From assembly GCA_964252035.1 (NCBI GenBank), contig OZ176204.1: DNA of 64,000 nucleotides, one strand, 5' to 3'. The notes beneath the pieces are model-generated. The model saw only the letters and a list, made by a program, of their open reading frames with translations, did no database searches and had not been told where the DNA came from. This DNA comes from Podarcis erhardii. Its lineage: Eukaryota. Made by a program: the position numbers and the translations under genes. Position 1 is the stretch's first letter, and every line of letters begins with the position of its first letter. Of the stretch, positions 19,980 to 20,802 are shown piece after piece.

Positions 19980-20802
19980 GGCCAAGGGTTGCTGGGTCAT
20001 CGGGTTCATTGTGACACCTCCCTCTGCTGGCTTATTGGTTACCAGAGTGCTAAAAGGCCTAGTGATCTCCTATGGTGGGATCATTTTGTCTGTGTGAAAG
20101 AAAGGAGATGGACATGTAAGTAGGATTTCTCTCAGCATATGAATTCTGCGATGATAGCGAATTCATACTGAGCATAGAGGAGTTAGGGAATACTAACTGT
20201 GAGCCCCATTTCTCTTTCTTTTCTAGGCTTTCCATACTGAGAAAAGTCTTTTCCCGTCTGGGGAGAAAAACTAAGATTTCTCCTCTCCCAGAGACCTCGC
20301 CCACAACCTCCCCCTCCACACCCCTCTTTGAGAAGACACAAAAGGTAAGCCCCTTCAGCATATAGATGTTGCTTTCAGAATAATATTAGTCCCTAAGGAT
20401 TCTTAGGAAAGGTCTCTCTGTAACTGTCTGAGGCCTATTTGAAGGTTCAGAAAATAAACATATCCCATGTGGTTCTTTGTTTCCCTGTAAGCTCTGCAGA
20501 CCTCCTGCCATCCTGATCTGGAGGAAGATGGCAGGAGGGAGAAACACCAAGGAAAACATGAAGGTAATGTCGATTTCCAAGGATATGTTCAGGGTAAATA
20601 GGAAAGTCCCTATAAAACAGTTATACTTGCTAGCCTTCTCTTCTTTTCCATTCAGATGATATAATAGTTGAAGACCTAGGGGGAGAGCAGGGGCCTTAAA
20701 GTTGTCCATCATCTGTGCAGCAGACCGAGAAGACAAACAGGTCACCTAGTCAAAGTCATCCCTGCTAAGATGAGAAGCATCTCTGCTATCTCTTCCAATA
20801 AA
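19980..20802 (+). CDS. Compact 4-exon gene model: exons 19980-20115, 20227-20344, 20500-20563, 20656-about 20820; CDS 20108-20699, 77 aa, unknown protein
   Basis: All introns are GT-AG: CAT|GTAAGT, TACTAAC+ttctctttcttttctag|, AAG|GTAAGC, ctctgcag|, AAG|GTAATG, cttctcttcttttccattcag|. Phases join with no stop. Kozak gagATGg. AATAAA at 20797. Confidence 0.5.

What the first reader, a model, noticed from the sequence alone, without database searches (positions are those of the whole stretch)
19980..20802. Compact four-exon gene model encoding an unrecognised 77-aa microprotein
Seen: three short introns (111, 155, 92 nt) with strong sites including a perfect TACTAAC, phases 2/0/1 that join cleanly, a good Kozak, stop in the last exon and AATAAA about 100 nt later. 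Product: MDMLSILRKVFSRLGRKTKISPLPETSPTTSPSTPLFEKTQKTSCHPDLEEDGRREKHQGKHEDDIIVEDLGGEQGP; an in-frame upstream ATG at 20072 would add 12 aa. It has a basic amphipathic N-terminus (reminiscent of the ARL3 helix LLSILRKL), an S/T/P linker and an acidic tail. It is invisible to the six-frame ORF track. Inference: a lineage-restricted or unannotated small gene.
Basis: partly seen in the sequence, partly recalled or inferred. Interest (0 to 1): 0.7.

Follow-up and report, generated by a model that had tools for sequence, protein, structure and literature searches.

The report
Real lizard exons, doubtful 77-aa microprotein
The splice sites and the 77-codon reading frame are really there, and two of the four proposed exons are used in RNA of related lizards, but they are joined to other exons than proposed and nothing shows that a protein is made, so this is most likely an ordinary lineage-restricted non-coding transcript.

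Summary
Such a chain did not arise in 60 random surrogates.

RNA-type contigs and reads of two related lacertid lizards give partial support. Exon 2 is bounded exactly at both predicted splice sites. The exon 3 donor (20563) is used in both species.

The specific model is not seen:
- The exon 3 donor joins other exons, absent from the window, not exon 4.
- Junctions 1>2, 2>3 and 3>4 were not observed.
- The exon 3/4 region is present in several diverged, rearranged copies.

The exon 2 peptide has no relative in 1.84 billion protein representatives, Pfam or the PDB, so there is no ARL3 link. Differences from the relatives show no exon-specific conservation. One copy carries a 1-nt deletion in exon 3.

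Best reading: an unannotated, lineage-restricted, multi-isoform spliced transcript, probably non-coding, whose ORF is incidental. A young microprotein is not excluded (about 0.1). No RNA of the window's own species was available.

The parts
16327..16423 (+). Upstream exon ('exon A'), joined to exon 2 in a transcript contig of related lizard A. In the window its acceptor is ttctgttttag| and its donor is GAA|GCATGT, a weak GC donor. In the exon 2 frame it holds a stop at 16362 and ATGs at 16371 and 16377.
   Evidence: The 98 loose letters before 20227 in the 651-nt X1 contig match window 16396-16423 at 28/28. Sequence read, frames. The exon is unique in the window.
20007..20086 (.). It has the highest word depth of the stretch and is seen in five different contigs in lizard A.
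   Evidence: tables 2, 3 and 8. In the relatives it is directly preceded by letters like window 19581-19608.
20108..20115 (+). No junction from it was seen.
   Evidence: no joint 20115>20227. X1 contig 20111-20164 runs through the donor. X2 contig 20123-20278 runs through the intron 1/exon 2 acceptor unspliced, so it is not an exon 1>2 spliced form. Donor score 9.1.
20227..20344 (+). Exon 2, a genuine exon. The alignment of a 651-nt transcript contig of lizard A starts and ends exactly at the predicted acceptor and donor. That contig has 4 substitutions and an in-frame CCTCCC insertion after 20294.
   Evidence: table 8 record 3 and table 4. Translation. Only one frame is open.
20500..20563 (+). 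Exon 3. Its donor at 20563 is used in lizards A and B, but it joins exons not found in the window. Use of its acceptor was not seen. The sequence exists in several diverged copies.
   Evidence: X1 records 6 and 7 end at 20563 and go on with other letters. X15 reads show ...ATGAAGG|GAGCACATTG. Contigs 20451-20515 and 20451-20517 cross the acceptor unspliced. There is a 1-nt deletion at 20544. The loose ends are not in the window.
20656..20801 (+). It is covered only by unspliced contigs.
   Evidence: X1 contig 20486-20767 and X2 contig 20566-20767 are continuous through intron 3. X1 contig 20789-20864 runs past the AATAAA. There is no joint 20563>20656. Translation.
19558..19800 (.). Copy of an interspersed repeat just upstream of the model. 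A second copy lies at 31988-32215.
   Evidence: 81% identity over 115 nt, plus further pieces. A loose end of X2 matches 32064-32087 at 100%.

Best explanation
The locus is part of an unannotated, lineage-restricted, multi-isoform spliced transcription unit on the + strand of a lacertid lizard genome, most likely non-coding (lncRNA-like).

Shown: exon 2 (20227-20344) and the donor of exon 3 (20563) are genuine splice sites. In a related lizard, exon 2 is fed from an exon 3.8 kb upstream (16327-16423).

Inferred: the exon 3/4 part belongs to a small family of diverged, rearranged copies whose donor is spliced to various downstream exons. The 77-codon frame arises because one GC/purine-rich exon happens to be open in one frame and the next in two. 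It is not maintained by selection and is not the unit of function. The transcript itself is most likely neutral or weakly regulatory transcription.
For: -: the 651-nt X1 contig aligns exactly to 20227-20344, and both its flanks are unlike the adjacent window sequence.
- its upstream flank equals window 16396-16423 (28/28, E 2e-11), so there is an exon-exon joint that skips 3.8 kb onto the predicted acceptor.
- two X1 contigs and the X15/X14 reads stop matching exactly at 20563 and continue with other letters. The unspliced continuation (GAAGGTTAAAC) is also seen.
- no joints were seen at 20115>20227, 20344>20500 or 20563>20656. Unspliced contigs cross the exon 1 donor, the exon 2 acceptor, the exon 3 acceptor and all of intron 3.
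- in the bulk RNA-seq of lizard B there is at most a stray read on exon 2 (mean depth under 1 in one run, none in the other) and none on the 3' UTR.
- there are up to five variant contigs over exon 3. One copy carries an extra 85-nt module between 20482 and 20491. Another has the exon 3 acceptor AG changed to AT.
- the exon 2 peptide has no relative in the word search, Pfam, 1.84 billion representatives or the PDB.
- listed variable places are 15.6% in exon 3, 27% in the exon 4 coding part and 9.8% in intron 3. Exon 3 shows 2 synonymous against 8 non-synonymous changes, plus a 1-nt deletion.
Against: - The chain of strong sites with an open frame is not expected by chance (0 of 60 surrogates).
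- With the upstream exon the frame stays open and gains an ATG (16371/16377) after an in-frame stop.
- The 6-nt insertion in exon 2 of lizard A is in frame.
It may derive from an exon 2-exon 3 spliced form, though the tool does not report what lies between.
- Exon 4 shows 6 synonymous against 5 non-synonymous changes (n is small and copies are pooled).
- No RNA of the window's own species was examined, and the runs of lizards A and B are of unknown tissue.
Confidence: 0.55

Rival explanations
1. A young, lacertid-restricted small protein gene, possibly a small gene family. The ORF is translated, starting either at the reader's ATG (20108) or in the upstream exon (16371/16377, which would give about 92 aa). 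The product would be a disordered protein with a basic amphipathic N-terminus and an acidic tail.
For: - Real exons with strong sites.
- The frame is open through exon A, exon 2 and exon 3.
- An in-frame 6-nt indel in exon 2, and a codon-to-codon 20302>20518 joint in lizard A.
- 6 synonymous against 5 non-synonymous changes in exon 4.
- Good Kozak context at 20108.
Against: - None of the three junctions was seen.
- Exon 1 is read through unspliced.
- The exon 3 donor joins other exons.
- Exon 3 shows 2 synonymous against 8 non-synonymous changes plus a 1-nt deletion.
- The exons are not better conserved than the introns.
- No predicted protein anywhere contains the exon 2 peptide.
- The composition is low-complexity S/T/P, typical of incidental ORFs.
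Confidence: 0.12
2. In the window's own species the locus is silent or decayed. The relatives' transcripts come from orthologues or paralogues with better sites, and here the model is only a relic of exons plus a chance frame.
For: - In the window the donor of the upstream exon is GC in a weak context (GAA|GCATGT, score -1.4).
- All laid RNA comes from other species, and most of it is only 90-95% alike and fits only partly.
- No RNA holder of the exact sequence was found.
Against: The three donors and two of the three acceptors of the model are strong and intact in the window. The absence of RNA runs for this species is absence of data, not of expression.
Confidence: 0.18
3. The exons are untranslated or alternative exons of a larger gene whose coding exons lie outside the laid stretch or outside the window. 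That gene could start upstream of 16.3 kb and end in or beyond exon 2. Exon A is fully open in another frame that stops 15 codons into exon 2.
For: - Exon A has its own strong acceptor, so at least one more upstream exon exists.
- Exon 2 and exon 3 are spliced to sequences that are not in the window.
- A 4710-nt contig starts with exon 3.
- Exon A frame 2 is open for 32 codons.
Against: - No Pfam match for exon A.
- No recognisable host coding exon among the window's ORFs.
- A stop in exon 2 followed by a used donor 72 nt later would expose such an mRNA to nonsense-mediated decay (established knowledge).
Confidence: 0.15

Closest known systems
Lineage-specific spliced long non-coding RNAs of vertebrates, often with repeat-derived 5' ends
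   Same: - Canonical splice sites and several isoforms, with unspliced forms alongside.
- Low expression and rapid sequence turnover.
- Short incidental ORFs with no protein homologues.
- Repeat copies directly upstream.
   Different: The transcript ends, polyadenylation and expression in the window's own species have not been shown. The ORF is longer and cleaner than usual for an incidental one.
Young or de novo small-ORF (microprotein) genes
   Same: A short multi-exon ORF of 77-92 codons with a good start context, predicted disorder, and no relatives outside a narrow lineage.
   Different: The defining evidence is missing here: stable junctions, translation and purifying selection. Where it could be tested, it was weak or negative.
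N-terminal amphipathic helix of ARL3 and other ARF-like GTPases
   Different: There is no detectable homology. The exon 2 peptide gave no hit in the PDB at E up to 10, in Pfam at E up to 10, or in 1.84 billion representatives at E up to 0.001. No GTPase domain follows. No myristoylation glycine sits at position 2 (sequence).

Membership tests
Protein-coding small-ORF gene | An mRNA in which the proposed exons are joined as modelled | tested here: not met
   none of the joints 20115>20227, 20344>20500 or 20563>20656 appeared in four runs of two related species. Exon 2 is joined to 16423 instead, and exon 3 to exons outside the window. This was tested only in relatives, not in the window's species.
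Protein-coding small-ORF gene | Reading frame kept and under purifying selection in relatives | tested here: inconclusive
   using the variants listed: exon 3 has 2 synonymous against 8 non-synonymous changes, plus a 1-nt deletion at 20544. Exon 4 has 6 against 5. The exons have more listed variable places than the introns. However, copies are pooled, orthology is uncertain and the numbers are small.
Protein-coding small-ORF gene | Evidence of translation (Ribo-seq, peptides) | not testable with these tools
   No such data are within reach.
Protein-coding small-ORF gene | Homologous proteins or a known domain | tested here: not met
   nothing was found for the exon 2 peptide. Exons 3 and 4 are too short to search alone. 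The joined product was not searched.
Spliced long non-coding RNA | Transcribed and spliced at canonical sites | tested here: met
   both borders of exon 2 and the exon 3 donor coincide with alignment ends of transcript contigs and reads in two related lizards. The A>2 joint skips 3.8 kb.
Spliced long non-coding RNA | No conserved, selected ORF | tested here: inconclusive
   There are no homologues and no exon-specific conservation. A proper multi-species alignment of orthologues could not be made.
ARF-like GTPase (ARL3) N-terminus | Sequence homology to ARL3/ARF proteins, followed by a GTPase domain | tested here: not met
   Searches gave no match. The model encodes no further domain.
Interspersed repeat (transposon-derived exons) | Many diverged copies in the genome | tested here: inconclusive
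   There is no second copy of 19700-21200 within the 64-kb window. Up to five variant contigs cover 20007-20086 and exon 3 in lizard A, and there are rearranged copies in lizard B. The genome-wide copy number could not be counted. The flank 19558-19800 is a repeat.

The most novel reading that the evidence does not exclude
A young microprotein gene family restricted to lacertid lizards. Exon A or exon 1, with exons 2 and 3, would encode a 77-92-aa disordered protein with a basic amphipathic N-terminus. Paralogous copies would swap their last exons. It would be caught at an early stage, in which the frame is only weakly constrained.
Probability: 0.08. Interest if true: 0.45.

Novelty: new member of a known kind. 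Interest (0 to 1): 0.17.

Why it matters
If the best reading holds, this is one more unannotated, fast-evolving spliced transcript in a reptile genome. It helps annotation and serves as a caution: a clean multi-exon ORF built from sequence alone can rest on real exons and still be the wrong transcript and probably not a gene for a protein. If the minority reading were true, it would be a datable example of small-protein gene birth in squamates. That would be of moderate interest to people who study de novo genes.

Tried and rejected
Searches and look-ups that gave nothing:
- Word search with the open stretch window:20120-20365:+, restricted to the exon 2 residues.
- Pfam on exon 2, exon 3, the open stretch and exon A.
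- phmmer of the exon 2 peptide against 1.84 billion representatives: 0 hits.
- PDB phmmer at E up to 10. The ARL3 link is rejected on this basis.
- An attempt to fetch relatives' DNA, using the mechanical minus-strand ORFs 20062-20361 and 20389-20745 as bait.
- Exact look-ups of two ORFs: none on record. No orthologue alignment could therefore be made.
- Exact exon 2 pattern in JGI metagenome contigs.
- Rfam at gathering thresholds and tRNA scan of the whole window.
- Self-comparison for a second copy of the locus in the window.
- Search of the window for the downstream partners of exon 3 (AGGAAATAAAAAAGG... and GAGCACATTGGCCCA...): no convincing match.
- One Pfam call failed on a 19-residue query.

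Exons were treated apart. In scripts, frames were only checked for openness and no joined sequence was printed.

Considered and rejected:
- A minus-strand transcript, because the A>2 joint is GC..AG only on the + strand.
- A genomic deletion in place of splicing, because the same contig stops matching exactly at the exon 2 donor as well.

Full report
**What is in the sequence**

The stretch was read directly and each exon translated by reference.
- Exon 1: ATG at 20108 (gagATGg), exon 20108-20115, donor CAT|GTAAGT.
- Intron 1: 111 nt, with TACTAAC at 20191-20197, 30 nt before a long pyrimidine tract and AG.
- Exon 2: 20227-20344 (LSILRKVFSRLGRKTKISPLPETSPTTSPSTPLFEKTQK), donor AAG|GTAAGC.
- Intron 2: 155 nt.
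- Exon 3: 20500-20563 (TSCHPDLEEDGRREKHQGKHE), donor AAG|GTAATG.
- Intron 3: 92 nt.
- Exon 4: from 20656 (DIIVEDLGGEQGP), TAA at 20697-20699, AATAAA at 20796-20801.
- The in-frame ATG at 20072 exists.
- None of this appears in the six-frame ORF list.

**Is it more than chance?**

I scored donors and acceptors with approximate position weights from my own knowledge.
- The - strand has one, at about 25470-25951, with internal exons of only 25 and 29 nt.
- Sixty Markov surrogates of 64 kb had none.

The cluster of good sites is therefore not random. The open frame adds little to that: exon 2 is open in one frame of three and exon 3 in two of three.

**Where the window comes from**

I took this as a lead and did not test it. 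The window is repeat-rich.
- A LINE with endonuclease and reverse transcriptase lies at 20-2785 on the minus strand, and a DDE_3 transposase fragment at 57975-58391.
- An interspersed repeat at 19558-19800 has a second copy at 31988-32215.
- No Rfam family and no tRNA were found.
- No recognisable host coding exon appears among the long ORFs.

**RNA evidence**

The run search found no RNA run holding the exact sequence.
- Six DNA-type runs of four close relatives hold 57-88% of the sampled words.
- Small shares (5-6%) occur in transcriptome-sized contig sets of two more distant organisms, A and B.
- Raw RNA-seq of organism B from 2026 was also listed.

(a) Exon 2 is real. A 651-nt X1 contig aligns to exactly 20227-20344. 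It has 4 substitutions and a CCTCCC insertion after 20294, and it carries unlike sequence on both sides.

(b) The upstream partner is a different exon. The 30 letters reported before 20227 match window 16396-16423 at 28/28. That place is the 3' end of a 97-nt exon, 16327-16423, with a good acceptor (ttctgttttag|). In this window its donor is GAA|GCATGT, a GC donor in a weak context. In lizard A, exon 2 is therefore spliced at the predicted acceptor, but to an exon 3.8 kb upstream.

An X1 contig (20111-20164) runs through its donor. An X2 contig (20123-20278) runs unspliced across the exon 2 acceptor, so it is not an exon 1>2 spliced form.

(d) The exon 3 donor is real. Two X1 contigs (one of 4710 nt) stop matching exactly at 20563 and go on with AGGAAATAAAAAAGG.... 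Reads of X15 and X14 show ...ATGAAGG followed by GAGCACATTGGCCCA, alongside the unspliced GAAGGTTAAAC. Neither continuation is exon 4, and neither is found in the window.

(e) Use of the exon 3 acceptor was not seen. Contigs 20451-20515 and 20451-20517 cross it unspliced.

(f) Exon 4 and the 3' UTR are covered only by contigs that are continuous through intron 3 (20486-20767 and 20566-20767, both about 9% different). One contig (20789-20864) runs past the AATAAA.

(g) Expression in lizard B is very low. In about 12% of two 15-Gb RNA runs, at most a stray read lay on exon 2 (mean depth under 1 in X14, none in X15) and none on the 3' UTR.

(h) The 20450-20680 part exists in several diverged copies.
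- Up to five variant contigs cover exon 3 in A.
- One B copy carries an extra 85-nt module between 20482 and 20491: 50 nt like 20628-20677 plus 35 other letters.
- One B copy has the exon 3 acceptor changed from AG to AT.
- One copy has a 1-nt deletion at 20544 with five substitutions nearby.

(i) One X1 contig joins 20302 to 20518. It may come from an exon 2-exon 3 spliced form, but the tool does not say what lies between the two sides. This is the only hint of a 2>3 link.

**Coding evidence**

The exon 2 peptide, the only exon long enough to search, has no relative.
- Proteins of 45-143 aa in the word search: none.
- Pfam: none.
- 1.84 billion cluster representatives by phmmer: 0 at E up to 0.001.
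- PDB at E up to 10: none.

The ARL3 likeness is therefore a hexapeptide coincidence.

- Exon 2: 0 synonymous, 1 non-synonymous (I>R in LSILRK, present in both A and B).
- Exon 3: 2 synonymous, 8 non-synonymous. One of these alone would make a stop. There is also the 1-nt deletion.
- Exon 4: 6 synonymous (counting TAA>TGA), 5 non-synonymous.
- Listed variable places: 15.6% of exon 3, 27% of the exon 4 coding part, 9.8% of intron 3.

Contig identities tell the same story. Exon 2 differs by 3.4%, like the intron 1/exon 2 contig (3.2%). Exon 3 differs by 6-9.5%, like the intron-containing contigs (8.9%).

There is no exon-specific conservation. The data pool several copies, only the best-supported places are listed, and the numbers are small, so this is suggestive rather than decisive. 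Because the downstream exon differs in the relatives, the 1-nt deletion cannot be called frame-breaking for their own transcripts.

**Points that keep the coding reading alive**
- With exon A, the exon 2 frame stays open and starts after an in-frame stop (16362), with ATGs at 16371 and 16377 (MTMTQERQNIGCIQPELK|LSILRK...).
- The exon 2 indel is in frame.
- Exon 4 has a slight synonymous excess.
- The window's own species has not been examined at the RNA level.

**Conclusion**

There are real unannotated exons of a lineage-restricted transcript. The particular four-exon mRNA is not what the relatives make, and nothing indicates a selected or translated protein.

I put 0.55 on a multi-isoform, probably non-coding transcript with an incidental ORF. 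The rivals are:
- 0.18 that the locus is silent or relic in this species.
- 0.15 that these are untranslated or alternative exons of a larger gene.
- 0.12 that it is a young microprotein gene.

**Limits**
- Only one read-laying run and one run search were allowed.
- Attempts to fetch relatives' DNA through mechanical ORFs failed, as did a metagenome pattern scan.

Noticed in passing
window 20-2785 (-): A LINE retrotransposon with long open frames: a 635-aa ORF with an Exo_endo_phos endonuclease domain (E 3e-16) and an adjoining 281-aa ORF with RVT_1 (E 3e-29). It runs off the window's left end.
   Followed up: partly
window 19558-19800 and 31988-32215: Two copies of an unclassified interspersed repeat, about 81% alike, with recurring GTCCC..ATTTTC motifs.
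   Followed up: partly
window 19609-20006: In reads and contigs of the related lizards, letters like 19581-19608 are followed directly by 20007 onwards. The window therefore has about 400 extra bases here (an insertion or rearrangement), or else 20007-20086 belongs to a variant of the same repeat family. Word depth over 20007-20049 is the highest of the stretch in lizard A.
   Followed up: no
window 20482-20491, seen in runs X2 and X15: An expressed copy in lizard B carries an 85-nt extra module between these places: 50 nt resembling 20628-20677 (the end of intron 3 and the start of exon 4) plus 35 other letters. This suggests module duplication or shuffling in this sequence family.
   Followed up: no
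window 57975-58391 (-): A fragment of a Tc1/mariner-type transposase (DDE_3, E 3e-6, just under Pfam's cut-off).
   Followed up: partly
window about 35300-36400: The most GC-rich part of the window (0.46-0.48), with GA/CT dinucleotide repeats read as (RE)n in ORFs. It may be a CpG-island-like promoter region. No coding exon was recognised.
   Followed up: no
window about 25470-25951 (-): The only other three-intron chain of at least 70 codons that passes the same site thresholds. Its internal exons are only 25 and 29 nt, so I take it as a chance model and a control.
   Followed up: no
window 16327-16423 (+): The upstream exon is also fully open in a second frame (TTFIRGEPCSRLEAYDHDPGKTKHWLYPTRAE), which would stop 15 codons into exon 2. 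It has no Pfam match.
   Followed up: partly
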